From NCBI RefSeq assembly GCF_032191835.1, contig NC_083237.1, forward strand, positions 67,642,001 to 67,706,000: a DNA stretch of 64,000 nt. The letters are read 5' to 3'. Position numbers and translations under genes: made by a program. Shown here piece by piece: positions 8,490-56,310 of this stretch (its first letter is position 1; each line of letters opens with the position of its first letter). Source of the DNA: Heteronotia binoei. Its lineage: Eukaryota. A model generated the notes under the pieces. It did not search any database. It was not told where the DNA came from and worked only from the letters and a program-made list of their open reading frames with translations.

Positions 8490-9367
8490 TATCATATGAA
8501 GCTGCCTTATACTGAATCAGACCCTGGGTCCATCCAAGTCAGTATTGTCTACTCAGACTGGCAGCGGCTCTCCAGGGTCTCAAGCTGAGGATTTTCACAC
8601 CTATTTGCCTGGACCCTTTTTTGGAGATGCCAGGGATTGAACCTGGGACCTTCTGCTTACCAAGCAGATGCTCTACCCCTGAGCCACAGCCCCATTCATG
8701 GCTCTCCAGGGTCTCCAGCTGAGGTTTCTTCACGCCTATTTGCCTGGACCCTTTTTTGGAGATGCCAGGGATTGAACCTGGGACCTCCTGCTTCCCAAGC
8801 AGATGCTCTACCACTGAGCCACAGCCCCATTCATGGCTCTCCAGGGTCTCCAGCTGAGGTTTTTCACACCTATTTGCCTGGACCCTTTTTTGGAGATGCC
8901 GGGGATTGAACCTGGGACCTTCTGCTTACCAAGCAGATGCTCTACCCCGAGCCACAACCCCATTCATGGCTCTCCAGGATCTCCAGCTGAGGTTCTTCAC
9001 ACCTATTTGCCTGGACCCTTTTTTGGAGATGCCGGGGATTGAACCTGGGACCTTCTGCTTACCAAGCAGATGCTCTACCCTGAGCCACAGCCCCATTCAT
9101 GGCTCTCCAGGATCTCCAGCTGAGGTTCTTCACACCTATTTGCCTGGACCCTTTTTTGGAGATGCCAGGGATTGAACCTGGGACCTTCTGCTTCCCAAGC
9201 AGATGCTCTACTACTGAGCCACAACCCCATTCATGGCTCTCCAGGATCTCCAGCTGAGGTTTTTCATACCTATTTGCCTGGACCCTTTTTTGGAGATGCC
9301 GGGGATTGAACCTGGGACCTTCTGCTTACCAAGCAGATGCTCTACCACTGAGCCACCATCCCTCCCC
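8490..9367 (-). repeat. Tandem array of 6 SINE 5' halves (about 134-bp unit) ending in one complete SINE tail
   Basis: TTGGAGATGCC recurs at about 8621, 8756, 8890, 9023, 9156 and 9290. Confidence 0.92.
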
Positions 9368-14705: not shown

Positions 14706-15688
14706 ATTTAGAGGATGGTGCAGAATTGTTTTCTGTTGCCCCAGAAGGTTGGACTAGAAACAATGGGTTGAAATTGAATTAAAATAGGTCTAAGAAGAAC
14801 TTCCTGATAAATAGAGCAGTAACTCAGTGGAAGACGCTTCCTCAGGAGGTGGTGGGCTCTCCTTCCTTGGAGGTTTTTAAATTGAGGCTAGAGGCCATCT
14901 GACAGCAATGCTGACCCTGTGAACTTAGGCAGATCGTGAGAAGGAGGGCAGGAGGGGCTGCATCAGTGCTTAGTTCTTGTGGCCCTTCCTTCCAGGTCCA
15001 GGGAAATGCTGATCACCACTTTGGGGTCAGGAAGCAATTTTCGCCAGGCCAGTTTGTCCAGGGATCCTGGGTGTGGAGCAGGTGTCACTGGGGATGTGTA
15101 TGGGGGGGAGGTATTTATGAATTTTCAGCACTGTGCAGGCGGGGGGTTTAGATAGATAACCTTGGAGGTCCTTTCCAGCTCTATGATTGTATGTTTAGAA
15201 TTATGCTGTTTTGAAACACCTCAGGGTGCTCTGCAGTTGCCTCCACCCTTTCTAAAACAGTCCATCCCTCACACCAGCCTCTCCTTGTTTCTGAATGACC
15301 AACCACCCACAATCATGAGAGCGATGCCGAAGTTTGATCCCAGTCCCTTATTTGCATTTCCTAGTCCCTCATTCTCAAACCCAACAACCAACATGGAGGG
15401 CAATGTAAAAGCTCTGCATTCCCCAAGAGAGGATGGACGGCCACATCCCGGGTGCTCCCGCATTCAAGAAACGAGCCCTCCTCCTCCTGCCCACGTGGGA
15501 CTATTCCATGCGCAGCCTCTGGAGCACAGCACACGACTAGCAGCACACTGCTCTGAACGTCATTGGACTACAGACCAATGACCTGATGCTTTCTGACACA
15601 ACCGAACACTTGCCCTCTTATCACAAGACAATGACCAGAGAACTCGGGGAACTCGTTGTAGGCAGGCGGTGTAAAAGTGTTGCAATTA

Positions 15689-16081
<393 letters not shown>

Positions 16082-16559
16082 TCAGGGGGCAGAGGAAGCA
16101 AACACACAGAGAGCAATGAGCAAATGGGAAAGGGGGTTCAGGTACTATCTGGGGCCCCAAGTCCTTTACTTAAAGATGCAGCAAGAGATGCAAGGCCTCC
16201 CTTCCCTGCTAAAGACTTCAAACTTGAGCCCCTCCCTTCACCTTTAGGGTGTAATCCACTGGCCAAAACTAATGGGAAGCTTGACTTCTTACAACCCACC
16301 ACCAAACAGCTGAGCTGAGAACCCATCTGGAGCCAGGAAACAGACAAGGCAGCTGGTGGGGGAGTGACTGATGAGGGGACGTTCTGCTTGTGAAAACCCT
16401 CCTTCACCCCATGTTTCACACACAAGAGCAGAATGCCTCCCACCCTGTGCTGAGGACAAGGATCTTTTCACTCATATACTAACTAGACAAACGGATGGTA
16501 TTTGGGTGAACTTTTATATCTCCAGTAAAGGCTGGTGGCATTTTGGGCTTTATCGATAG

Positions 16560-17195
16560 AAGGACAGTGTCCAGATCACATCACGTGAAGTGATGGTATC
16601 ACTTTACTCTGCTCTGGTTAGACTCACTTAAAAGAAGGATATAGACAAGCTAAACGGGTCCAGAGGAGGGCAATGAAGATGGTGAGGGGTCTGGACACCA
16701 AGTCCTATGAAGAAAGGTTGAAGGAGCTGAGCATGTTTAGTCTGGAGAGGAGGCGGCTGAGAGGTGATAGGATCACCATCTTCAAGGACTTGAAAGGCTG
16801 TCATATAGAGGATGGTGTGGAATTGTTTTCTGCAGCCCCAGAAGGTAGGATCAGAACCAGTGGGGTGAAATTAAATCAAAAGAGTTTTCGGCTAAACATT
16901 AGGAAGTGAGAGTGGTTCCTCAGTGGAAGACGCTTCCTTGGGAAATGATGGGCTCTCCTTCCTTGGAGGTTTTTAAAGAGAGGTTAGATGGCCATCTGAT
17001 AGCAATGCTGATCCTGTGAACTTAGGCAGGGTAGGAAGGGTCGCATCAGTTTTCGTGGTCTTTTCTTACAGGCCCAGGGAAATGCTGTTTGCCACTTTGG
17101 GTCAGGCAGCAATTTTTCTCCAGGTCAGTTTGGCCAGGGATCCAGGAGTTTTGGGTTTTTTTGGTCATCTTCTGGGCATGAAGCAGGGGTCACTG
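16560..17195 (+). mobile_element. CR1 3' fragment (family with GTCATCTAGTCCAAC-type tail)
   Basis: [30 protein letters not shown]...; related pieces at about 3960-4110, 8130-8345, 14710-15185 and 21800-22220. Confidence 0.85.
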
Positions 17196-17770
17196 AGGGC
17201 CAGTTTGGTGTAGGGGTTAAGAAGAAGAAGAAGATATTGGATTTATATCCCGCCCTCCACTCCGAAGAGTCTCAGAGCGGCTCACAATCTCCTTTACCTT
17301 CCTCCCCCACAACAAACACCCTATGAGGTGGGTGGGGCTGGAGAGGGCTCTCACAACAGCTGCCCTTTCAAGGACAACCTCTGCCAGAGCTATGGCTGAC
17401 CCAATGCCATGCTAGCAGGTGCAAGTGGAGAAGTGGGGAATCAAACCCGGTTCTCCCAGATAAGAGTCCACGCACTTAACCACTACACCAAACTGGCTCT
17501 CCTACACCAAACTGGACTCTTATCTCGGAAAAACGGGTTTGATTCCCCACTCCTCCATGTGCACCTGCTGGAATGGCCTTAGGTCAGCCAGAGCTCTCAT
17601 AGGAGTTGTCCTTGAAAGGGCAGCTGCTGTAAGAGCTCTCTCAGCCCCGCCTCACAGGGTGTCTGTTGTATGTGTGTGTGGGGGATGGTAAAGGAGATTG
17701 TGACCGCTCTGAGACCCTGAGATTCAGAGTATAGGGTGGGATATAAATATAATATCTTCATCTTCTTGTG
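17195..17770. mobile_element. Nested, inverted pair of Squam3-like SINEs
   Basis: Minus copy 17221-17501 lies next to plus copy body 17515-17770; the plus copy's first 26 nt are at 17195-17221. Confidence 0.8.
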
Positions 17771-17899
17771 TGGGGGAGGTATTTGTGAACTTCCTGCATT
17801 GTGGAGGGTTGGACTAGATGACCCTGTAGGTCCCTTCCACTATGATTTTATGATTCTAAAACACTACAGGGTTTTTTTTGGAGGGGGGATCTCATTCTA

Positions 17900-19185
17900 C
17901 TGTGGTACAAGGGAAGTTTACTGGGTTTTTTTTCAAATGGACAGTCTTTGGAACTATCTAGAATTGTATATGAAGAAAAGGATGGATTCCAAGGAGAAGC
18001 AGCTAATACTATATGAGATTTATGAGACAAGCTTGCTGAATCTGGGCCCTTTTGGAGTCTTAAGGACAAGGAGTGTGCCCACCGTATCAGGAAAATGTTA
18101 GCTCCCTTTAATAACCTTCATTAACCAGGATTGGTTTCCAGCAGGGAAGGATCCAGGCGAATTTAAGGAATGGAGATTCTCTGGTCTGTTGTTTATAAAT
18201 AACTGGATTAAAGATGAGGGATTCTTAGATAAATCCTCAATGGAAAAGAAGTTTGTAATTAAGGTCTCCTGGTTTAGATATTTCCAATTAAAAAATCTTA
18301 TCGCTAAACTAATCAGGTCTAAAAACTTTCTCCGGCCATTAACTTCATTTGAGGAATTAATTCGGAAGGAGAATGCTGGTAAACAAAGCATGATTTCAGC
18401 TCTTTATAAATTATTAGTGGCAGCAGTATATAAGGACCCTCTACCATATAAAAAAATGGTCAAATTCTTTAGAACTTACCCTCTCTGAATCTGACTGGAA
18501 ACAGATATGGAACTCTCCCTCCAATAAATCTTGCTGTTAGAATATTAAACTCCAATTTTATAAGTTGCTATTCAATTGGTATTTAACGCCACACAAACTA
18601 AGCCTAATAAACAAGTCTTTGAGCTCATTATGCCGGAGATCTTGTAAGCAGGAAGGCAGCCCCTTACACATGTGGTGGGAATGCCATATCGTTCAGAATT
18701 TTTTGAGGGAGTTTCATAAAGAGATTTCCAACATGGTGGGTGTTCCATTGCCTTATTCCCTGGAATTCTTATTACTGGATCTTTGGGCTGATTCAACGAT
18801 AGATAAAACTATCAAAACTTCTGTCTCAGCATCGGTTGCTTCTGCTCACTTGGTTATTGCCAGGAATTGGAAGTCCCCCACAAGTTCTTTACTTAGACAA
18901 TGGGACCAGAAACACTGGTAACAGTTTTTGATGGGCAGGATTATGCATAATCCATTTTGGGGGGACTCTCGTGCGGTAGTTCCCTTATCAGAGTATGATG
19001 AAACATGGAAACCAGTTTTAGAGTTTTTGTGCAATAAGGATATAATTCCCTTGATGCAGCTAAAGCTAGATGGTTGGTAACTGTGAACATAGGGTTTGTA
19101 ACAGAGTGTTGATGGTATTCTTGGCTATTATGTTTTATAGTTTGGTTGCATGTTTTTCTATTGAAATAAAAATTAAAAAAAGAGA
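17900..19185 (+). mobile_element. L1 ORF2 3' fragment with A-rich tail
   Basis: LFNWYLTPHKL...C..SCKQEGSPLHMWWEC; AATAAAAATTAAAAAAA at about 19165. Confidence 0.85.
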
Positions 19186-19229
19186 AGTACCTCCAGCTCC
19201 AGTGAGAAGGGTGGGCAGAGGTGCTTTGT

Positions 19230-19860
19230 GGAAGAAGCAAGTGAACCCCAAGGAAGATCTTGGGGTCGTGATAGATAACTCACTGAAAATGTCAAGACAG
19301 TGTGTGTTTGCAATAAAAAAGGCCAACGCCATGCTGGGAATTATTAGGAATGGAATTGAAAACAAATCAGCCAGTATCATAATGCCCCTGTATAAATCGA
19401 TGGTGCGGTCTCATTTGGAGTACTGTGTGCAGTTCTGGTCGCCGCACCTCAAAAAGGATATTATAGCATTGGAGAAAGTTCAGAAAAGGGCAACTAGAAT
19501 GATTAAAGGGCTGGAACACCTTCCCTATGAAGAAAGGTTGAAACGCTTAGGGCTCTTTAGCTTGGAGAAACGTCGACTGAGGGGTGTCATGATAGAGGTT
19601 TACAAGATAATGCATGGGATGGAGAAAGTAGAGAAAGAAGTACTTTTCTCCCTTTCTCACAATACAAGAACTTGTGGGCATTCGATGAAATTGCTGAGCA
19701 GACAGGTTAAAACGGATAAAAGGAAGTACTTCTTCACCCAAAGGGTGATTAACATGTGGAATTCACTGCCACAGGAGGTGGTGGCGGCTGCTGTGTGACA
19801 CACAATGTTGGACTGGATGGGCCATTGGCCTGATCTAACATGGCTTCTCTTATGTTCTTA
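19230..19860 (+). mobile_element. CR1 3' fragment
   Basis: KKANAMLGII...[24 protein letters not shown]...FFTQRVINMWNSLP, then the (TTATGTTC) tail. Confidence 0.92.
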
Positions 19861-20817
19861 CACTGGAGGTTGCCATGGTGCCCCCATGCACCACCCCCCA
19901 TGGGGACCTCCAAGACATGACTGAGGGAACTGGAGAGTCACCAAAACGAAAGCTGTGTCAGAAACCCTCCCCCCTCTGGCCAGGTTTCTGCCCTCTAATG
20001 TATTTTCTGCTACTGCACATGATGGCCATAGTATATGAAGGTTGCTGGTGTCTCTATGCCCTGGCGCAGATGGCATCTCCTTCCTTCTGTTTCCCTTCCG
20101 CTTTCCCCTCCTCCCTCCTGCCTGGCCCTTTGGGCTTCCTCTCAACAGGAAGCACATTCCGGCGTGAAGGAGGGAGCCTGGAGGAGCCACTCTGGTCTCA
20201 ACCCTCCCTCTGATCAGCCATCCAGGCCCACCCGGCCTCTTTGAAATGGATTCTCTTTTGGTTAAAAGTGAAAGTTGTGCTTTATTGCTTTGACTAAGAA
20301 GATACGACAGGGGGGGAGGGAGAAGTCTTTAGCATGCTTTGCCCTACATCAGGCATTTCTGGGAAGGGTCCTGATGGAAATGAGCCCCCTGCAGCAAATC
20401 ACAATAAAGCTTCATCAAGCACAGAGAAGTCTGCGCAAGCATCACTGGTAAATCCTCCAAGTTGAAAGGACCTCCCTGACAATTAGCTCCATCTCTCCCT
20501 TTGGGGGAGGGAGGCACCAGTGGGGAGTGGCTGCGGCAAAGGAGCTCTTCGAGACGGGAACACTCAACAAGGACTGAGCTAATGAAACGCAGGCAAAGAA
20601 ATTCCTCCAACACCTCTCAAGACTGTACAGCTATACTACTTTGATCCTTATAACTAGCATTTCATCTACCCACCCACCCACCCATCCAATACACAGAATA
20701 GTTTGAAAGTATAACATTCTATAAATAAAAGCAGCAAGAGAAAGATCTGGCAGACCTTGGAGTAAAGTAAGAATTACAGATTCAGGAAAGTCCTACCTCT
20801 TGAGCTATTCTACTCAC

Positions 20818-21045
20818 AGTTTTTAACCCTGGCTTTGGTGTCCCCATGGAAGGAGTTAAGAGCTGCTTGGCTATGGCTTCCCTTTGGGTCTGGCTGGTTG
20901 CACTCAAGATGGTGCGAGACCCGTCTTCGTGGATGACCATGGAGGCGCCCGGATGCACCCCAGGCCCATTGATAACTGCCTGCCTCAATTCATGGACATT
21001 CCAAGGAGTCACAGGTTGAGGATAGGTGAGTTTGGTAGCAAAGAC
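20818..21045 (-). CDS. POLR1A: POLR1A exon 12 (in-frame acceptor at 21045)
   Basis: [34 protein letters not shown]...PKPGLKT; 228 nt. Two duplicated acceptors upstream (21122, 21199) are out of frame. Confidence 0.93.
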
Positions 21046-21212
21046 CTGGGAGGAAGAAAAAGCATCCAGTTCTCATTCCAAGGAGTCACAGGTTGAGGAT
21101 AGGTGAGTTTGGTAGCAAAGACCTGGGAGGAAGAAAAAGCATCCAGTTCTCATTCCAAGGAGTCACAGGTTGAGGATAGGTGAGTTTGGTAGCAAAGACC
21201 TGGGAGGAAGAA
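20997..21212 (-). repeat. 77-bp tandem triplication of POLR1A exon 12 acceptor plus first 49 exonic nt
   Basis: CATTCCAAGG... starts at 20997, 21074 and 21151 (period 77). Confidence 0.97.
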
Positions 21213-22506
21213 GCATGCAGTCGTCCTGCACGTGGAGAGAAGGCAGACAAGCCCCTCCCTGAGGGGTGACCTCCATTCCTCTTCAGCTATTACCGGATTC
21301 CACAGGCCAGCCAAAGACAACTCGCTCCCATATCCCTTAGTGATGTAGAGCAGGTGTATTCCACCTCTCACCAAAGCTCTCATGTTAGCTAAAATATAAT
21401 CAAATCAATAAAAAGATCAAATAAGCAAACAAACCAGGCAAGCAGGAATCACTGCGTCTGCTGCAGATACTACAGAAGCTGAAGCACTGGTGACCTATCA
21501 GCAAAGGCCAGGGGTGACAACAACATGTTGCTTAGACGTCAACACCAAATGGGTGCATGGCAGAAATTCCACAGGTGAGGTACCACAAGCGAAGCTGCAT
21601 GAGGCAGCCACCCACCCCAGTCACATGGCAGAGCTGCTATGAAGGCCTCAGCAGTCAAGCCGGTTTGTATGGAAGCAGGTAATGCTGAAGACTTGGTTCT
21701 CACCAACGAGGAAGGACTGACTGATGAGGTGGCAGTAGTGACCATGGGGTTTTGGAATTTACTGTTTTGGGGACGGGAAAAGCTGTATGTAGCCAGAAGT
21801 ATAGGTTGAACTTCAGGAAAGCAAATTTTGACAAACTTAGGAGTGATGCTGGGTAAAATCTCATGGTCAGAAATACTTAAGGAGAAGGGAGTTCAAGAGG
21901 GGTGGCAGGTTTTCAAGCAGAGACTAGAGGGCCATCTGACAGCAATGCTGATTCCGTGAATCAGGTAGCTCATGAGAAGGAGGGCAGGAAAGGCTGCATC
22001 AGAGCTTAGTTTTCGTGGCCCCTTCTTACACACCCAGGGAAATGCTTCAGGTCAGTCAGCAATTTTTCTGCAGGCCAATTTGGCCAGGAATCCTGGAGGT
22101 TTTTGCCATCTTCTGGGCACAGAGCAGGGGTCACTGGGGAGGTGTTTGTGAATTCCCTGCATTGTGCAGGAGGTTGGACTAGATGACCCCAGAGGTCCCT
22201 TCCAACTCTATGGTTCTAAGACGTTAGGTCCTGAGGAAATGGCAGTTCCTGATCTCTGTCTTCATGTGGCCGCAAATTCATTAAACAGGGGGTACAGCCA
22301 ACAACAAGTATTGCTTCCAAAATGAATAAATCCACACAGGGCCCTCTTTCTAGCTTTTTGCAAGAGGCCAGAACTAGAGCATTCCCAACAGACCCCTCCC
22401 CCAGGGAGAGAGCCTCTCGCTCTTACCTTCAGGAAATTTCTTCTCCAGTTCAACTGAAATCACAGCTTCCCTCCCAACCCCCCCCTCTTGACCAGCCCCC
22501 CCCTCA

Positions 22507-22650
<144 letters not shown>

Positions 22651-22833
22651 TCATCAATTTGAAATAAAAAAGACACACATCAAAAAGGTCACGCCCCTGT
22701 CACCATCTCAGCAGGCAGAGAGCGAGAGAGAGGTCATGACAAATGCCTGCTTCTGGGAGAGAAATGCTTCTTTAAAACCCCCTTCAGGTAATTCTTGACA
22801 ACTGTGCTATAGTTCTCCTCACACAGCTCTCAC

Positions 22834-23007
22834 CTGACGCACACCGGGGAACTTTTCAGGCATGAGCTTGTCCAAGTCGCTGTCAAAGAGAATATTGACC
22901 CTGCTCTGAAGACGGATCCAGATGTTGTAGAGCTTGTCTGCCATCGTCTGCCCAGGAACTGTGGCCAAGAGGGAGCGGTCCAGAGGCTCCACGGGCTGCT
23001 CAGCCGG
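22834..23007 (-). CDS. POLR1A: POLR1A exon 10
   Basis: [58 protein letters not shown]; 174 nt. Confidence 0.94.
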
Positions 23008-25288
23008 CTGCGGAACAGACAACACAACCTCAGGGGAGGGCGGGGGGAGACGGGGACTGGAATAGAGGCTGGAGAGCACAACCCACTGGGCACCCGTGGG
23101 CCTTGCCTCCACCACCTTCTGCCCCAAGCCTCAAAGAAGGTGCAGAGAGTTTGGGGGAGGCCAGCGTAAGAAGGAAGCTGCCCCTTTGCAGCACTGTCTT
23201 GCTCTTGATTTAAACGTGATCAGTTATTTCACCCAAAGAAAGGGAAGGAGCATTGTCAGACATGGGTGGGGGGAGAAAGAGGTGCTCCACAATAGGTCCA
23301 TCATGGTCACGCCCCTGTCACCATCTCATCACAACAGGGGCTTCTTCACTGGCATGAACACAGACAATAAAAAGGGGGGCAAACCCCAACACCACTATCC
23401 AAAGGCCTGGATGCAGGCTGGACCGGTGATTCCAACCGCCCCCCCTTGGGCCACTCCCCCAGGGACCCAGAAGCCACCCCCTGGGAAGCCCCACAGGCAG
23501 AGGTGGGGAGGGGGCCAGAAAGTCCCATTCTGCCCACACTGATCTCCAACAAGGAGATGTTTTTATACTCCACAAAACCTGCTTTAGAGCTCTTGCCTCC
23601 CTCCCCCCTCGGGCTGATGGGGCTGCCAAGGCTGGGGGTGGGGGGAGCCTCAGACGGTTGGTGTCCAGCTTCCCCAGGGAGCTTTTGGCTGGAATAACTC
23701 CCTGCGCTCAATTCCAATGCTGTGTCTCCACTGGGAATCCTTTGTTAGGGCTACAGAAAGGTTAGGCATTCCTTTAATCCACACTCCTGGAATTGTGCAC
23801 TCCCACAAACACACCCAGAGCTTTGCGGATACGAAAAGAACCAGGCGTCTTGGAAGACGGTCACTACTGAGGAAGTGTTCCTTCCGCCTTGCAGCAGCAA
23901 TTCCCACGCTTCCTGAAGTGAGTCCCCCCTCTAAACTTCAGACCTTGCCTTATGGTGCCACAGGCCGTCAGCTGAGCGGGGCTGGCAACCAGCGTGTGCA
24001 GGCAGCACTCAACCCCTCCCATACTAATGGTGGCTGGGAAGGAAGGAGGGAGGTGCAGGGCAGAGGAGGGATGGTGCAGCCCCATTCTCTTCTTCCACTT
24101 CTGGAGGGGAGGGACCCAGTCTTGGGTCTGACCAGCACCAGAGCTCTGGCCCACGGCAGGATCTCACTCACCGTTGGAGGGACAGCTGCCCTTATGGTAT
24201 TAGTGATGGACATGTCAAAGAAAGTCAATTGTGGCCGCAAAATTAAAAACAAAAAAGGGACACTCCTGGCAGGGGAGATTTTGATTTAAAGAGTTGAAAC
24301 AGCGGAGACTAAAGAACTGAAGCTCAAGGGTTTATCTACAGTTGTAAAGAAAGGGGAAAGGGTGGTTTTGTTCATGACTGAAATGCTTCTCCTGAGCATG
24401 AGAGTGGAAAATAATGGATAGAAGGTTCTTTGGAGATTGTGAGCCGCTCTGAGACTCTTCGGAGTGGAGGGCTGGATATAAATCCAATATCTTCTTCTTC
24501 TTCATCTTCTTCTTCTTTAGAGCCTCCCTCCTCTTTAGCAGGAGTTCAAGACATCCCTAGCATATTATATCCAAAAGAGGTGTGAACAGGAACATGTTTA
24601 AAAGAGGGGCTCCCCTCCTTGCCCACTAATATGGATTCATGAAATAATCACGTGAACATATCATTGCCACAACTGTTCTGTAAGTAACTTTGTGAGGCAG
24701 CTGTGTACTACAAGGGATCCAGCACTTTTCTCTTTTGATGAGAAATGGTTTCATTTACTTTTTGAGAGTGTGGAATTCACAAGTTTGAAATGAGTTTGTT
24801 AAAAGGCAAATTTGGTATCTGATTAGCTTCTTCACTCTTTTTTCTTGTAATGTCCCTGTTGTATTGATATTTTCTTACCTTCCTTAATTTTTATACTTTT
24901 ATGAACTTTTAAAAATATGCATAGTTTCATTACTGTGTTTTTATTAAAAATTACATATGTATGACATTATTCATATTTTTATACCTCTCTCCAATACAAC
25001 AGGGTTCTAGTTTTGCTCCTAATAACAGAATATAAAGTTGTTAGATATTTAGTTCTCTTCAGATGTCACATTATTCCCACTTCAGTCCTTCGGGCCTGGA
25101 ACATACCCGGTCAGTAAGGAACTTGTTCTGGACCACCTTGGAGGAGACAGGGCAAGTCTCATTACACAGAACTCTGACTAACAACCTGAGACTGCAGAAC
25201 TTGAATTAAAAAGAGAACAAAAGAACTCCCCACATTTTCGCCAGATGTCTCACTTCATACTGTGGGCCCTGAAAAGTTTTCTCCTCAC

Positions 25289-32204: not shown

Positions 32205-33465
32205 GTGGTCAGTCCGACTCTTTGCGACCCCAAGGACAGTCAGCCAGGCCCTCCTGTCTGCCACCATCCTCCGAAGTCTGCTCAAATTCGTGTTTGTTAC
32301 ATCAGTAATGCTGTCCAGCCATCTCCTCTTTTGCCGTCCCCTTCTTCTTTTGCCTTCTGTCTTTCCCAGCATCAGGTCTTCTCCAGGGAGTGATCCCTTC
32401 TCATTGGGTGGCCAAAGTCTTTGAGCGTCAGCTTCAGAATCTGCCCTTCCAGGGAACAGTCAGGGTTGATTTCCCTTAGGACTGACTGATTGAACTCACA
32501 AATTGTTGTTGTTCAGTCGCACAGTCAAGTCCGACTCTTTGCGACCCCATGGACAAAGTCACGCCAGGCCCTCCAGTCTTCCACCATCCTCCAAAGTCTG
32601 CTCAAATTCGTGTTTCTTACATTAGTAACACTGTCCAGCCATCTCATCTTTTGCCGTCCCCTTCTTCTTTTGCCTTCTGTCTTTCCCAGCATCAGGGTCT
32701 TCTCCAGTGAGGGCTCCCTTCTCATTGGGTGGCCAAAGTCTTTGAGCGTCAGCTTCAGCATCTGCCCTTCCAGGGAACAGTCAGGGTTGATTTCCCTTAG
32801 GACTGACTGATTGAACTCACAAATTGTTGTTTTTCAGTCGCACAGTCAAGTCCGACTCTTTGCGACCCCATGGACAAAGTCACGCCAGGCCCTCCTGTCT
32901 TCCACCATCCTCCGAAGTCTGCTCAAATTCGTGTTTCTTACATCAGTAACGCTGTCCAGCCATCTCATCTTTTGCCGTCCCCTTCTTCTTTTGCCTTCTG
33001 TCTTTCCCAGCATCAGGTCTTCTCCAGGGAGTGCTCCCTTCTCATTTTGTGGCCAAAGTATTTGAGCTTCAGAATCTGACCTTCCAGGGAACAGTCAGGG
33101 TTGATTTCCCTTAGGACTGACTGATTGAACTCACAAATTGTTGTTCAGTCGCACAGTCAAGTCTAACTCTTTGCGACCCCATGGACAAAGTCATGCCAGG
33201 CCCTCCTGTCTTCCACCATCCTCCAAAGTCTGCTCAAATTCGTGTTTGTTACATTACTAACACTGTCCAGCCATCTCATCTTTTGCCATCCCCTTCTTTT
33301 GCCTTCTGTCTTTCCCAGCATCAGGGTCTTCTCCAGGGAGTGCTCCCTTCTCATTTGGTGGCCAAAGTATTTCAGCTTCAGCATCTGACCTTCCAGGGAA
33401 CAGTCAGGGTTGATTTCCCTTAGGATGGACTCATTTGTTCGTCTTGCAGTCCAAGGGACTCTAGC
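32205..33465 (-). repeat. Four tandem copies of a BovB (RTE) 3' end, period about 315-321 bp
   Basis: Each copy encodes LEKTLMLGKTEGKRRRGRQKMRWLDS...AWRxxVHGVAKSRT; the linker GACTGATTGAACTCACAAATTGTTG is repeated. Confidence 0.9.
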
Positions 33466-53775: not shown

Positions 53776-54389
53776 ATGGATGTAGTGGGGGGGGGGGCAG
53801 CAAATGAATCCCAGCGGGTGTGTGACAAAAGCTGAAACAAGTCATTACAGGTGGAAGTTTAACACCAGATCAACCCATGCAAAAACAGTGCTCAAAACCA
53901 CATTTGAACACTATAATTCCATAACCTGTAAAATTTCTAAACATTCCACTGAATGTTTAGAAGGTACCACAGGTCAGACCAGGAGGTGAGTATCCTGTTG
54001 GGACAAAAGCAGAATGAGATGTGTATAGCGAAAACACGATTCTGCTTCCTTCCAAACAACAATGTGACAAAATCATGCACAAGGAACCAAAATGCAGCCC
54101 CAAAATCCAGGAAGGATCCTCCTACATAATATTGAGACAAGCCATTTCATCCAAGATCTGGAGTTTTACACACTGGGACACTGTGCCCAAAACGGGGGGT
54201 GAGGTCTTTCCCACCAGCCAGTAGTTTGTTTAAGCTTCTTGAATTAAGGGGAAGGGTCTTCATGATCTCTTTCAAGATGGTGGAGACTGACCTCTCTCTT
54301 AGGGAAGCATTTACTGCTTCCTAGGCCCAGTTCAGTGTGACTGACCATAATGGGCAAGGTCAGGGACACTGGTGTGGGAGCTAGAGACG

Positions 54390-56310
54390 TCATGTTGGAT
54401 CAGGCCAGTTGCCCATCCAGTGCAACACTCTGTGTCACATAAGAACATAAGAGAAGCCATGTTGGATCAGGCCAATGGCCCCTCCAGTCCAACACTCTGT
54501 GTCACAGTAGAACATAAGAGAAGCCATGTTGGATCAGGCCAGTGGCCCATCCAGTCCAACACTCTGGGTCACATAAGAACATAAGAGAAGCCATGTTGGA
54601 TCAGGCCAGTGGCCCATCCAGTCCAACACTCTGGGTCACATAAGAACATAAGAGAAGCCATGTTGGATCAGGCCAGTGGCCCATCCAGTCCAACACTCTG
54701 GGTCACATAAGAACATAAGAGAAGTCATGTTGGATCAGGCCAGTGGCCCATCCAGTCCAACACTCTGTGTCACATAAGAACATAAGAGAAGCCATGTTGG
54801 ATCAGGCCAGTGGCCCATCCAGTGCAACACTCTGTGTTACAGTAGAACATAAGAGAAGCCATGTTGGATCAGGCCAGTGGCCCATCCAGTCCAATACTCT
54901 GTGTCACAGTAGAACATAAGAGAAGCCATGTTGGATCAGGCCAGTGGCCCATCCAGTCCAACACTCTGTGTCACATAAGAACATAAGAGAAGCCATGTTG
55001 GATCAGGCCAGTTGCCCATCCAGTGCAACACTCTGTGTCACATAAGAACATAAGAGAAGCCATGTTGGATCAGGCCAATGGCCCCTCCAGTCCAACACTC
55101 TGTGTCACAGTAGAACATAAGAGAAGCCATGTTGGATCAGGCCAGTGGCCCATCCAGTCCAACACTCTGGGTCACATAAGAACATAAGAGAAGCCATGTT
55201 GGATCAGGCCAGTGGCCCATCCAGTCCAACACTCTGTGTCACATAAGAAGATAAGAGAAGCCCTGTTGGATCAGGCCAGTGGCCCATCCAGTCCAACACT
55301 CTGTGTCCCATAAGAGAAGCCCTGTTGGATCAGGCCAGTGGCCCATCCAGTCCAACACTCTGTGTCACATAAGAACATAAGAGAAGCCATGTTGGATCAG
55401 GCCAGTGGCCCATCCAGTGCAACACTCTGTGTCACAGTAGAACATAAGAGAAGCCATGTTGGATCAGGCCAGTTGCCCATCCAGTCCAACACTCTGTGTC
55501 ACATAAGAACATAAGAGAAGCCATGTTGGATCAGGCCAGTTGCCCATCCAGTGCAACACTCTGTGTCACATAAGAACATAAGAGAAGCCATGTTGGATCA
55601 GGCCAATGGCCCCTCCAGTCCAACACTCTGTGTCACAGTAGAACATAAGAGAAGCCATGTTGGATCAGGCCAGTGGCCCATCCAGTCCAACACTCTGTGT
55701 CACAGAAGAACATAAGAGAAGCCCTGTTGGATCAGGCCAGTGGCCCCTCCAGTCCAACAGTCTGTGTCACATAAGAACATAAGAGAAGCCATGTTGGATC
55801 AGGCCAGTTGCCCATCCAGTGCAACACTCTGTGTCACATAAGAACATAAGAGAAGCCATGTTGGATCAGGCCAATGGCCCCTCCAGTCCAACACTCTGTG
55901 TCACAGTAGAACATAAGAGAAGCCATGTTGGATCAGGCCAGTGGCCCATCCAGTCCAACACTCTGTGTCACAGAAGAACATAAGAGAAGCCCTGTTGGAT
56001 CAGGCCAGTGCCCCCTCCAGTCCAACAGTCTGTGTCACATAAGAACATAAGAGAAGCCATGTTGGATCAGGCCAGTTGCCCATCCAGTGCAACACTCTGT
56101 GTCACATAAGAACATAAGAGAAGCCATGTTGGATCAGGCCAATGGCCCATCCAGTCCAACACTCTGTGTCACATAAGAACATAAGAGAAGCCCTGTTGGA
56201 TCAGGCCAGTGGCCCATCCAGTCCAACACTCTGTGTCACAGAAGAACATAAGAGAAGCCATGTTGGATCAGGCCAGTGGCCCATCCAGTCCAACACTCTG
56301 TGTCACACAG
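54390..56310 (-). repeat. Minisatellite of about 29 copies of the CR1 3'-terminal 67-bp unit
   Basis: Unit CATAAGAACATAAGAGAAGCCATGTTGGATCAGGCCAGTGGCCCATCCAGTCCAACACTCTGTGTCA matches the CR1 tails at 33617 and 42483. It runs into a single CR1 3' UTR at 56310-56457. Confidence 0.95.

What the first reader, a model, noticed from the sequence alone, without database searches (positions are those of the whole stretch)
20997..21227. Triplicated splice acceptor at POLR1A exon 12; only the last copy is productive
Seen: on the transcript strand the order is acceptor A1 (21199), 49 nt of exon, a 28-nt linker, A2 (21122), the same 77 nt again, then A3 (21045) and the full exon. The three 49-nt exonic copies are identical. 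Splicing to A1 or A2 adds 154 or 77 nt and reads ...[22 protein letters not shown]-stop, a premature stop upstream of the catalytic exon 13. The intron end before A1 (AGGACGACTGCATGCTTCTTCCTCCCAG) differs from that before A2 and A3 (AGAACTGGATGCTTTTTCTTCCTCCCAG), which have a longer pyrimidine tract. That difference argues against simple assembly stutter. Inference: the spliceosome must skip two near-perfect decoys in an essential single-copy gene. This could be a built-in NMD-coupled dial on Pol I level, or a snapshot of intron extension by tandem duplication. Each junction is CAG|GT, so recursive re-splicing is formally possible, but GTCTTT is a weak donor.
Basis: partly seen in the sequence, partly recalled or inferred. 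Interest (0 to 1): 0.75.

Follow-up and report, generated by a model that had tools for sequence, protein, structure and literature searches.

The report
Triplicated splice acceptor in gecko POLR1A
A 77-base piece covering the end of an intron and the start of a coding exon of the RNA polymerase I large-subunit gene sits three times in a row in this gecko. Messages join at the last copy, so the two extra copies look like young, unused decoys that lengthen the intron, which is a real but fairly ordinary mutation.

Summary
Positions 20997-21212 are a perfect 77-nt x 2.8 tandem repeat across the 3' splice site of a POLR1A (RPA1) coding exon on the minus strand. Using acceptor A1 or A2 adds 154 or 77 nt and gives the stated frameshift and stop.

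RNA evidence:
- mRNA contigs from two organisms and one discriminating raw read all join exon 11 to the last acceptor, A3.
- No A1 or A2 junction was seen, but depth was tiny.
- About two intronic RNA reads of an independent sample, inferred from bin depths, span the copy junctions. An assembly artefact is therefore unlikely. Three copies rather than two is not verified.

The nearest relative found (a Logan genomic contig, 95 % aa identity) and all other vertebrate fragments have one copy. The array is therefore lineage-specific and looks young.

Best reading: a microhomology-mediated tandem duplication, then expansion to three copies, which turned 2 x 49 nt of former exon into intron. The "NMD dial" idea has no support, and recursive splicing is implausible.

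One thing is unexplained: 4-5 differences cluster in about 20 nt upstream of A1, next to 216 perfect bases.

The scan had already noted an analogous TAF6 array in this genome. This is a new member of a known kind, of modest interest.

The parts
22522..22644 (-). It ends ...IGIPM in phase 0, with donor ATG|GTGAGA.
   Evidence: Sequence. Spliced pieces of mRNA contigs X1 and X3 lie on 22520-22644.
21046..22521 (-). Productive intron, 1476 nt. Its last 154 nt are the two extra repeat units.
   Evidence: The joint skipping 1476 nt appears in contigs X1 and X3 and in one read each of X4 and X5.
21151..21227 (-). Repeat copy 1: the original intron end plus decoy acceptor A1 (AG at 21200-21201) plus 49 nt identical to the exon start. 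Its upstream ~15 nt differ from the linker.
21074..21150 (-). Repeat copy 2: 28-nt linker, decoy acceptor A2 (AG at 21123-21124) and 49 nt of exon-start sequence. It is identical to copy 3.
20997..21073 (-). Repeat copy 3: 28-nt linker, productive acceptor A3 (AG at 21046-21047) and the first 49 nt of the real exon.
20818..21045 (-). It matches human RPA1 residues 461-532, with donor ACT|GTGAGT.
   Evidence: translation; PDB 7vba/7ob9 RPA1, E 2e-35; contig pieces on 20815-21043.
21086..21088 (-). Premature TGA reached if A1 is used.
21009..21011 (-). Premature TGA reached if A2 is used.
15686..16042 (-). ORF holding the next POLR1A exon, with the catalytic [10 protein letters not shown] motif. 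Exact exon bounds were not determined.
   Evidence: ORF list.

Best explanation
This is a real, lineage-specific germline tandem duplication that then expanded from two to three copies. The unit is 77 nt: the last 28 nt of the intron plus the first 49 nt of the next POLR1A coding exon. Each unit carries a complete polypyrimidine tract and CAG, and the only usable donor is the upstream exon's. The array therefore creates no new exon. It lengthens the existing intron by 154 nt, and 2 x 49 nt of former coding sequence is now intronic. Productive mRNA joins the upstream exon to the last acceptor, A3, which is the only one followed by the rest of the exon in frame. A1 and A2 are by-products. A1 looks weakened. 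A2 is locally identical to A3, so some A2 use is expected, and those transcripts would carry a stop 191 nt before the next junction and be removed by NMD. Shown here: the repeat, the frames, single-copy relatives and A3-type mRNA. Inferred: that the repeat is in independent reads, how A3 wins (exon definition with the nearby donor, plus NMD clean-up), and that the array has no regulatory role.
For: The repeat is perfect over 216 nt and is the only one of its kind in the window. The gene is identified by the match to RPA1. The frames and stops are confirmed.

The A3-type junction appears in a 4211-nt mRNA contig of organism A and a 4264-nt contig of organism B. It also appears in an X4 raw read that, from the bin depths, has 75 nt on the exon side. 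No contig sequence lies on the linker in either run.

In X5 the bin depths add up to whole 100-nt reads at 21130-21229, 21192-21291, 21270-21369 and about 21026-21125. These form two pairs with inserts of about 240 and 266 nt. One X5 read 'fits two places', and the 77-nt repeat is the only internal repeat of 40 nt or more in the stretch. These reads would span original intron end / 49 nt / linker, and 49 nt / linker / 49 nt. X5 carries G in 5 of 5 reads at 20902 and 20992, where the assembly has A, so it is not the assembled haplotype.

The nearest relative, L001, has one copy, as do all other vertebrate fragments. The last 5 nt of the 49-mer plus the linker (GAATGAGAAC...) align with L001's intron end (GCATGACCGC...). 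This puts the junction in an ATG microhomology, as a real duplication junction would be.
Against: No DNA reads were available. No whole-genome run holds the stretch. Support from X5 rests on depth arithmetic for about two read pairs, not on displayed reads, and the 'fits two places' read could instead be the short-sided junction read. Reads of 100 nt cannot tell two copies from three. An A3-type junction looks exactly like the normal junction of an allele without the duplication, so the mRNA data do not prove that a duplicated allele splices correctly. A2 and A3 are identical from -90 to +49, so there is no sequence-based reason here for A3 to win. The cluster of 4-5 differences upstream of A1 is not explained by a simple recent duplication.
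Confidence: 0.6

Rival explanations
1. The duplication is a segregating, partly loss-of-function allele. Transcripts from duplicated alleles splice mostly to A1 or A2 and are destroyed by NMD. The normal-looking mRNA then comes from alleles without the duplication, or with fewer copies.
For: A2 is identical to A3 over -90 to +49 and is transcribed first. The premature stops meet the NMD position rule. An A3-type junction cannot be told from a non-duplicated allele's junction. In X5 all five exon reads carry the non-reference G at 20902 and 20992, while the intronic reads (by inference) carry the repeat. In X5 the only intronic reads of the 2.9-kb stretch cluster at 21026-21369. The perfect copies suggest a recent, possibly unfixed event.
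Against: X4 is heterozygous at the two SNPs and expresses the reference A allele well (6 of 8 and 3 of 5 reads). X1 and X3 mRNA contigs also carry the reference alleles. If the reference haplotype class carries the array, it does yield stable mRNA. All counts are tiny, and the phase between the SNPs and the repeat is unknown.
Confidence: 0.17
2. It is an assembly artefact, either wholly (the true copy number is one) or in copy number (two rather than three).
For: The copies are 100 % identical. No DNA read evidence could be obtained. Short RNA reads cannot count copies.
Against: The inferred X5 reads span both kinds of copy junction, and X5 differs from the assembly at nearby SNPs. The junction sits in a microhomology, and the linker is not a copy of the adjacent intron end. 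There is no other perfect tandem repeat and no gap in the window.
Confidence: 0.1
3. It is a selected, NMD-coupled throttle. A1 and A2 are used at a regulated rate to set the level of the Pol I large subunit.
For: There are frame-shifting decoys with strong acceptor signals in an essential gene. The premature stop is well placed for NMD.
Against: The array is not conserved: the nearest relative and all other vertebrates examined have one copy. The perfect copies imply too little time for a selected function to be visible. No A1 or A2 junction and no linker-bearing contig appears in the RNA. No RNA structure or known RNA family is present.
Confidence: 0.05

Closest known systems
Intron gain or intronization by tandem duplication of an AG|GT-containing segment (Rogers model; Hellsten et al. 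2011, PMC3265369; Lehmann et al. 2010, PMC2891723; Ma et al. 2016, PMC4974935)
   Same: A short intragenic tandem duplication carries splice signals, so the redundant copy is spliced out and the protein is unchanged. Mis-spliced forms carry premature stops, and NMD is invoked as a backstop. The junctions here are also CAG|GT.
   Different: No new intron is born here. The unit includes a complete existing acceptor, so the existing intron is simply lengthened and its old donor is used. The duplicated GT (GTCTTT) is not a usable donor.
Competing alternative 3' splice sites, from NAGNAG to more distant tandem acceptors (e.g. PMC2018619, PMC2423196)
   Same: Several AGs with shared or similar upstream signals compete for one donor.
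   Different: The sites are 77 nt apart, each with its own tract and possible branch point. Both alternatives shift the frame. The sites arose by duplication, and no alternative use was observed.
Poison-exon / AS-NMD autoregulation, as in SR-protein and hnRNP genes (established knowledge)
   Same: An alternative splice choice would introduce a stop more than 55 nt before a downstream junction.
   Different: Those elements are deeply conserved, demonstrably used and regulated. This array is lineage-specific, shows no measurable use, and lies in a polymerase gene with no known link to splicing feedback.
TAF6 intron-plus-exon-start tandem array in the same genome (scan note s1-328419, not checked here)
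   Same: An intron end plus the first bases of the next exon is copied head to tail. The RNA is reported to remove the whole array as intron, leaving unused decoys.
   Different: The TAF6 unit is a whole short intron plus 27 in-frame bases, in six copies. Here the unit is 28+49 nt, out of frame, in three copies.

Membership tests
Intron lengthening / intronization by tandem duplication | Head-to-tail copies that include the splice site and adjoining exon sequence | tested here: met
   Period 77, 2.8 copies, 100 % identity. Each copy holds CAG|GTC.
Intron lengthening / intronization by tandem duplication | Ancestral single-copy state in relatives | tested here: met
   L001 (95 % aa identity, 197/228 nt in the exon) has one copy. 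All other vertebrate fragments are also single. Only one reasonably close outgroup was available.
Intron lengthening / intronization by tandem duplication | Duplicated exon sequence is absent from mature mRNA | tested here: met
   mRNA contigs X1 and X3 and one X4 read join 22522 to 21045. There is no contig depth on 21076-21172. Caveat: a non-duplicated allele would give the same junction.
Intron lengthening / intronization by tandem duplication | The repeat exists in the animal, not only in the assembly | tested here: inconclusive
   X5 bin depths fit whole reads across the copy junctions. No DNA reads were available.
AS-NMD regulatory switch (poison splice choice) | The alternative junction is actually used | tested here: inconclusive
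   No A1 or A2 joint was listed. However, only about 2 raw junction reads exist in total, and contigs drop rare forms.
AS-NMD regulatory switch (poison splice choice) | Conservation of the poison element across species | tested here: not met
   The nearest relative and other vertebrates have a single copy.
AS-NMD regulatory switch (poison splice choice) | Premature stop more than 50-55 nt upstream of a later exon junction | tested here: met
   The stops lie 268 nt (A1) and 191 nt (A2) before the exon's donor.
AS-NMD regulatory switch (poison splice choice) | The isoform rises when NMD is blocked, or changes with demand | not testable with these tools
   This needs cell or animal experiments.
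Recursive splice site | After the first splice, the junction regenerates a donor close to consensus | tested here: not met
   The junction would read ATG|GTCTTT. It matches MAG|GTRAGT only at -1, +1, +2 and +6.

The most novel reading that the evidence does not exclude
The array is older than it looks and is kept uniform by unequal exchange. Selection is disabling the upstream decoys one at a time. On this reading, A1 has already lost three U of its tract and a UGA branch-like motif, which would be compensatory evolution caught in progress. Alternatively, copy number acts as a heritable, NMD-coupled throttle on Pol I large-subunit output.
Probability: 0.07. Interest if true: 0.6.

Novelty: new member of a known kind. 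Interest (0 to 1): 0.3.

Why it matters
If real, this is a clean natural experiment. An essential single-copy gene carries three acceptors, two of them identical over about 140 nt, and the cell still makes the right message. That would make the rules of 3' splice-site choice directly testable with one-, two- and three-copy minigenes or natural alleles. The rules in question are proximity to the donor, exon definition, order of transcription and NMD clean-up. It also shows how former coding sequence becomes intron in one step. As evolutionary genetics it is an expected outcome of common small tandem duplications, not a new mechanism.

Tried and rejected
- **DNA read support.** No whole-genome run holds the stretch, and only small DNA libraries of the same species label were listed.
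- **Exact look-ups.** Two window ORFs that span the repeat were searched in public assemblies, with nothing on record.
- **Templated filler.** The 15-nt linker start occurs nowhere else in the window with up to 2 mismatches, so a local templated insertion from elsewhere is not supported.
- **RNA structure.** The fold of 20960-21270 is no better than shuffles (z = 0.17), so structure that hides A1 and A2 is rejected.
- **Known RNA families.** None was found in 15000-24000.
- **Recursive splicing.** Rejected on the donor sequence.
- **Closer outgroups.** The remaining protein hits are fish, mammals and more distant squamates, and the L002/L003 introns are too diverged to align.
- **Dating.** Zero differences over 139 paired nt gives only a loose upper bound of about 5-11 My at 1-2e-9 per site per year.
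- **Not done, by instruction.** For that reason the full-length annotated POLR1A protein, and other geckos' whole loci, were not retrieved. The large representative protein search was not used, because the protein's identity was not in doubt.

Full report
**Observation.** The stretch was read on the minus strand. The order is: original intron end, CAG, a 49-nt segment, a 28-nt linker ending in CAG, the same 49 nt, the same linker, then the 49 nt again continuing into the exon. Tandem Repeats Finder reports 20997-21212, period 77, 2.8 copies, 100 % matches and no indels. The repeat finder gives three in-register copies, two identical and the third 87 % identical.

**Gene and anatomy.** The frame from 21045 is open for 76 codons. 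It matches residues 461-532 of human RNA polymerase I subunit RPA1 in solved structures (7vba, 7ob9; E 2e-35). The exon is 20818-21045 (228 nt, phase 0 at both ends), with donor ACT|GTGAGT. The upstream exon is 22522-22644 and ends ...IGIPM, with donor ATG|GTGAGA. The next exon, with the catalytic [10 protein letters not shown] motif, lies within the ORF at 15686-16042. The exon numbering '11/12/13' was not checked.

**Consequences of each acceptor.** Use of A1 or A2 adds 154 or 77 nt and shifts the frame. Both read ...[23 protein letters not shown] and then stop. The stop is at 21086-21088 for A1 and 21009-21011 for A2. These are 268 and 191 nt before the exon's donor, which satisfies the usual 50-55-nt rule for NMD (established knowledge).

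**Is the repeat real?** No whole-genome DNA run holds the stretch, and only RNA runs do.

The single read-laying run covered 20300-23200, and its 97-nt bin depths for raw-read run X5 are informative.
- In one mate class, 0.44 + 0.59 bins equals 100 nt, which is a whole read at 21130-21229.
- In the same class, 1.0 + 0.03 bins equals 100 nt, which is a read at 21270-21369.
- In the other class, 0.8 + 0.23 bins equals 100 nt, which is a read at 21192-21291.
- A further 50 nt in bin 21076-21172 is continuous with the lower bin, which fits a read at about 21026-21125.

These make two pairs with inserts of about 240 and 266 nt. The read at 21130-21229 would run from the original intron end through the first 49-mer and 21 nt into the linker. 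The read at 21026-21125 would hold a whole linker between two 49-mers.

X5 is also the only run with a read that 'fits two places'. The 77-nt repeat is the only internal repeat of 40 nt or more in the stretch. That read could, however, be the junction read with only 24 nt on the exon side.

X5 shows G in 5 of 5 reads at 20902 and 20992, where the assembly has A. So it is not the assembled haplotype. X4 is heterozygous at both sites.

I therefore take at least two copies, in the assembled arrangement, to be present in an independent sample. This is an inference from depth arithmetic on about four reads. Reads of 100 nt cannot confirm three copies.

**Which acceptor is used?**
- A 4211-nt mRNA contig of organism A (X1, depth 17.7) and a 4264-nt contig of organism B (X3, depth 9.5) both join 22522 to 21045. 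Both continue through the whole exon.
- Neither run has any contig sequence on 21076-21172.
- One X4 raw read shows the same joint. Its short side is 25 nt, and the depth over the upstream exon allows only 25 nt there. It therefore has 75 nt on the exon side and discriminates A3.
- The X5 junction read has only 24 nt on the exon side and cannot tell the three acceptors apart.
- No A1 or A2 joint was listed. With about two raw junction reads, and contigs that drop rare forms, this sets only a loose limit, roughly below a tenth of steady-state mRNA in X1.

One caveat matters. An A3-type junction is identical to the normal junction of an allele without the duplication.

**Relatives.** A word search with the 76-aa exon found genomic fragments from many vertebrates. 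The closest is P0001 (95 % aa identity), on a 2783-nt Logan contig, L001. L001 has a single acceptor and a single exon start. Exon identity is 197/228 nt, and the last ~290 nt of the intron align at 77 % column identity. All other fragments also read straight from one acceptor into [17 protein letters not shown]. The array is therefore lineage-specific.

**Origin.** The last 5 nt of the 49-mer plus the linker (GAATGAGAACTGGATGCTTTTT...) align with L001's intron end (GCATGACCGCTTGGTGCTTTTT...). The copy junction thus lies in an ATG shared by the intron and by the exon at position 47-49. This is a microhomology junction with no filler. The linker start occurs nowhere else in the window. A later unequal exchange to the right of the differing patch would yield exactly the present arrangement: one edge copy followed by two identical copies.

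**Unexplained.** The intron end before A1 differs from the linker by 4-5 events within about 20 nt. These are T/G in the ATG, two adjacent substitutions, G/C, and a 3-nt T deletion. The remaining 216 nt are perfect. Against L001, copy 1 looks derived for the G/C change and the T deletion, the linker looks derived at one site, and one site is ambiguous. Both sequences therefore appear to have changed. Candidate explanations are:
- formation of the duplication between two diverged alleles or lineages;
- an older array kept uniform by exchange, with a diverging edge;
- error-prone synthesis at the junction;
- selection against A1.

With one outgroup at 77 % intron identity I cannot choose among them.

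**Splice signals.**
- A1 has a 12-nt pyrimidine run (5 U) and no UnA branch-like motif within 60 nt.
- A2 and A3 have a 15-nt run (8 U). They have candidate branch points UGUGAC at -41 and AAUGAG at -28.
- L001 has CAUGAC at -38. The equivalent position in copy 1 reads CAGGAC.
- A2 and A3 are identical from about -90 to +49.
- The regenerated junction ATG|GTCTTT is a very poor donor, so recursive splicing is implausible.
- The region folds no better than shuffles (z = 0.17), and no Rfam family matches.

**Reading and odds.**
- Most likely (0.6): a real, young, lineage-specific tandem duplication, expanded to three copies, that lengthened the intron. A3 is chosen through exon definition with the nearby donor, and any A2 or A1 products are cleared by NMD. 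The mechanism of choice is inferred, not shown.
- Rival (0.17): a segregating hypomorphic allele whose transcripts are mostly mis-spliced.
- Rival (0.1): an assembly artefact, or a wrong copy number.
- Rival (0.05): a selected NMD throttle.

**Comparison with what is known.** The closest concept is intron gain or intronization by tandem duplication of AG|GT-containing sequence (PMC3265369, PMC2891723, PMC4974935). Here an existing intron is extended rather than a new one created. Earlier notes of this scan describe an analogous TAF6 array on the same genome piece (s1-328419), reported to be spliced out whole. Those notes name the genome as Heteronotia binoei. I did not verify either statement. 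The finding is a new member of a known kind.

Noticed in passing
window 20902 and 20992: Two synonymous A/G differences lie in the POLR1A exon. X5 reads are all G, X4 is mixed, and the X1 and X3 contigs carry the reference A. The relative L001 has the G state at both sites, so the assembled haplotype looks derived. These would be useful markers for allele-specific expression.
   Followed up: partly
window 21026-21369: In X5 the only intronic reads of the 2.9-kb stretch (about four reads in two pairs) cluster at the 3' end of this intron, over and just upstream of the repeat. None fall in about 1.5 kb of other unique intron. This may mean slow or incomplete removal of this intron end, or it may be chance.
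   Followed up: no
window 21361-21392 (minus strand): An intronic block, TAGCTAACATGAGAGCTTTGGTGAGAGGTGGAA, is almost identical in L001. It is framed by an acceptor-like U-rich tract plus TAG and by a donor-like TTG|GTGAGA, leaving a 17-nt potential micro-exon. No RNA evidence was seen for it.
   Followed up: no
window 21850-22220: An interspersed repeat (SINE-like) inside the intron draws very high depth and many partly fitting reads in all four RNA runs. These are reads from other copies, not from this locus.
   Followed up: no
window 16043-20817 versus L001 1490-2162: The intron after this exon is about 4.8 kb here but about 0.7 kb in the relative. The window's copy holds a reverse-transcriptase-like ORF on the plus strand at 19070-19798, so the extra length is likely transposon insertions.
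   Followed up: no
window 54383-56307; 8566-9356; 32211-33425: There are three ordinary imperfect tandem arrays: 67 nt x 29, 133 nt x 5.9 and 321 nt x 3.9, at 93-95 % identity. They contrast with the perfect POLR1A repeat.
   Followed up: no
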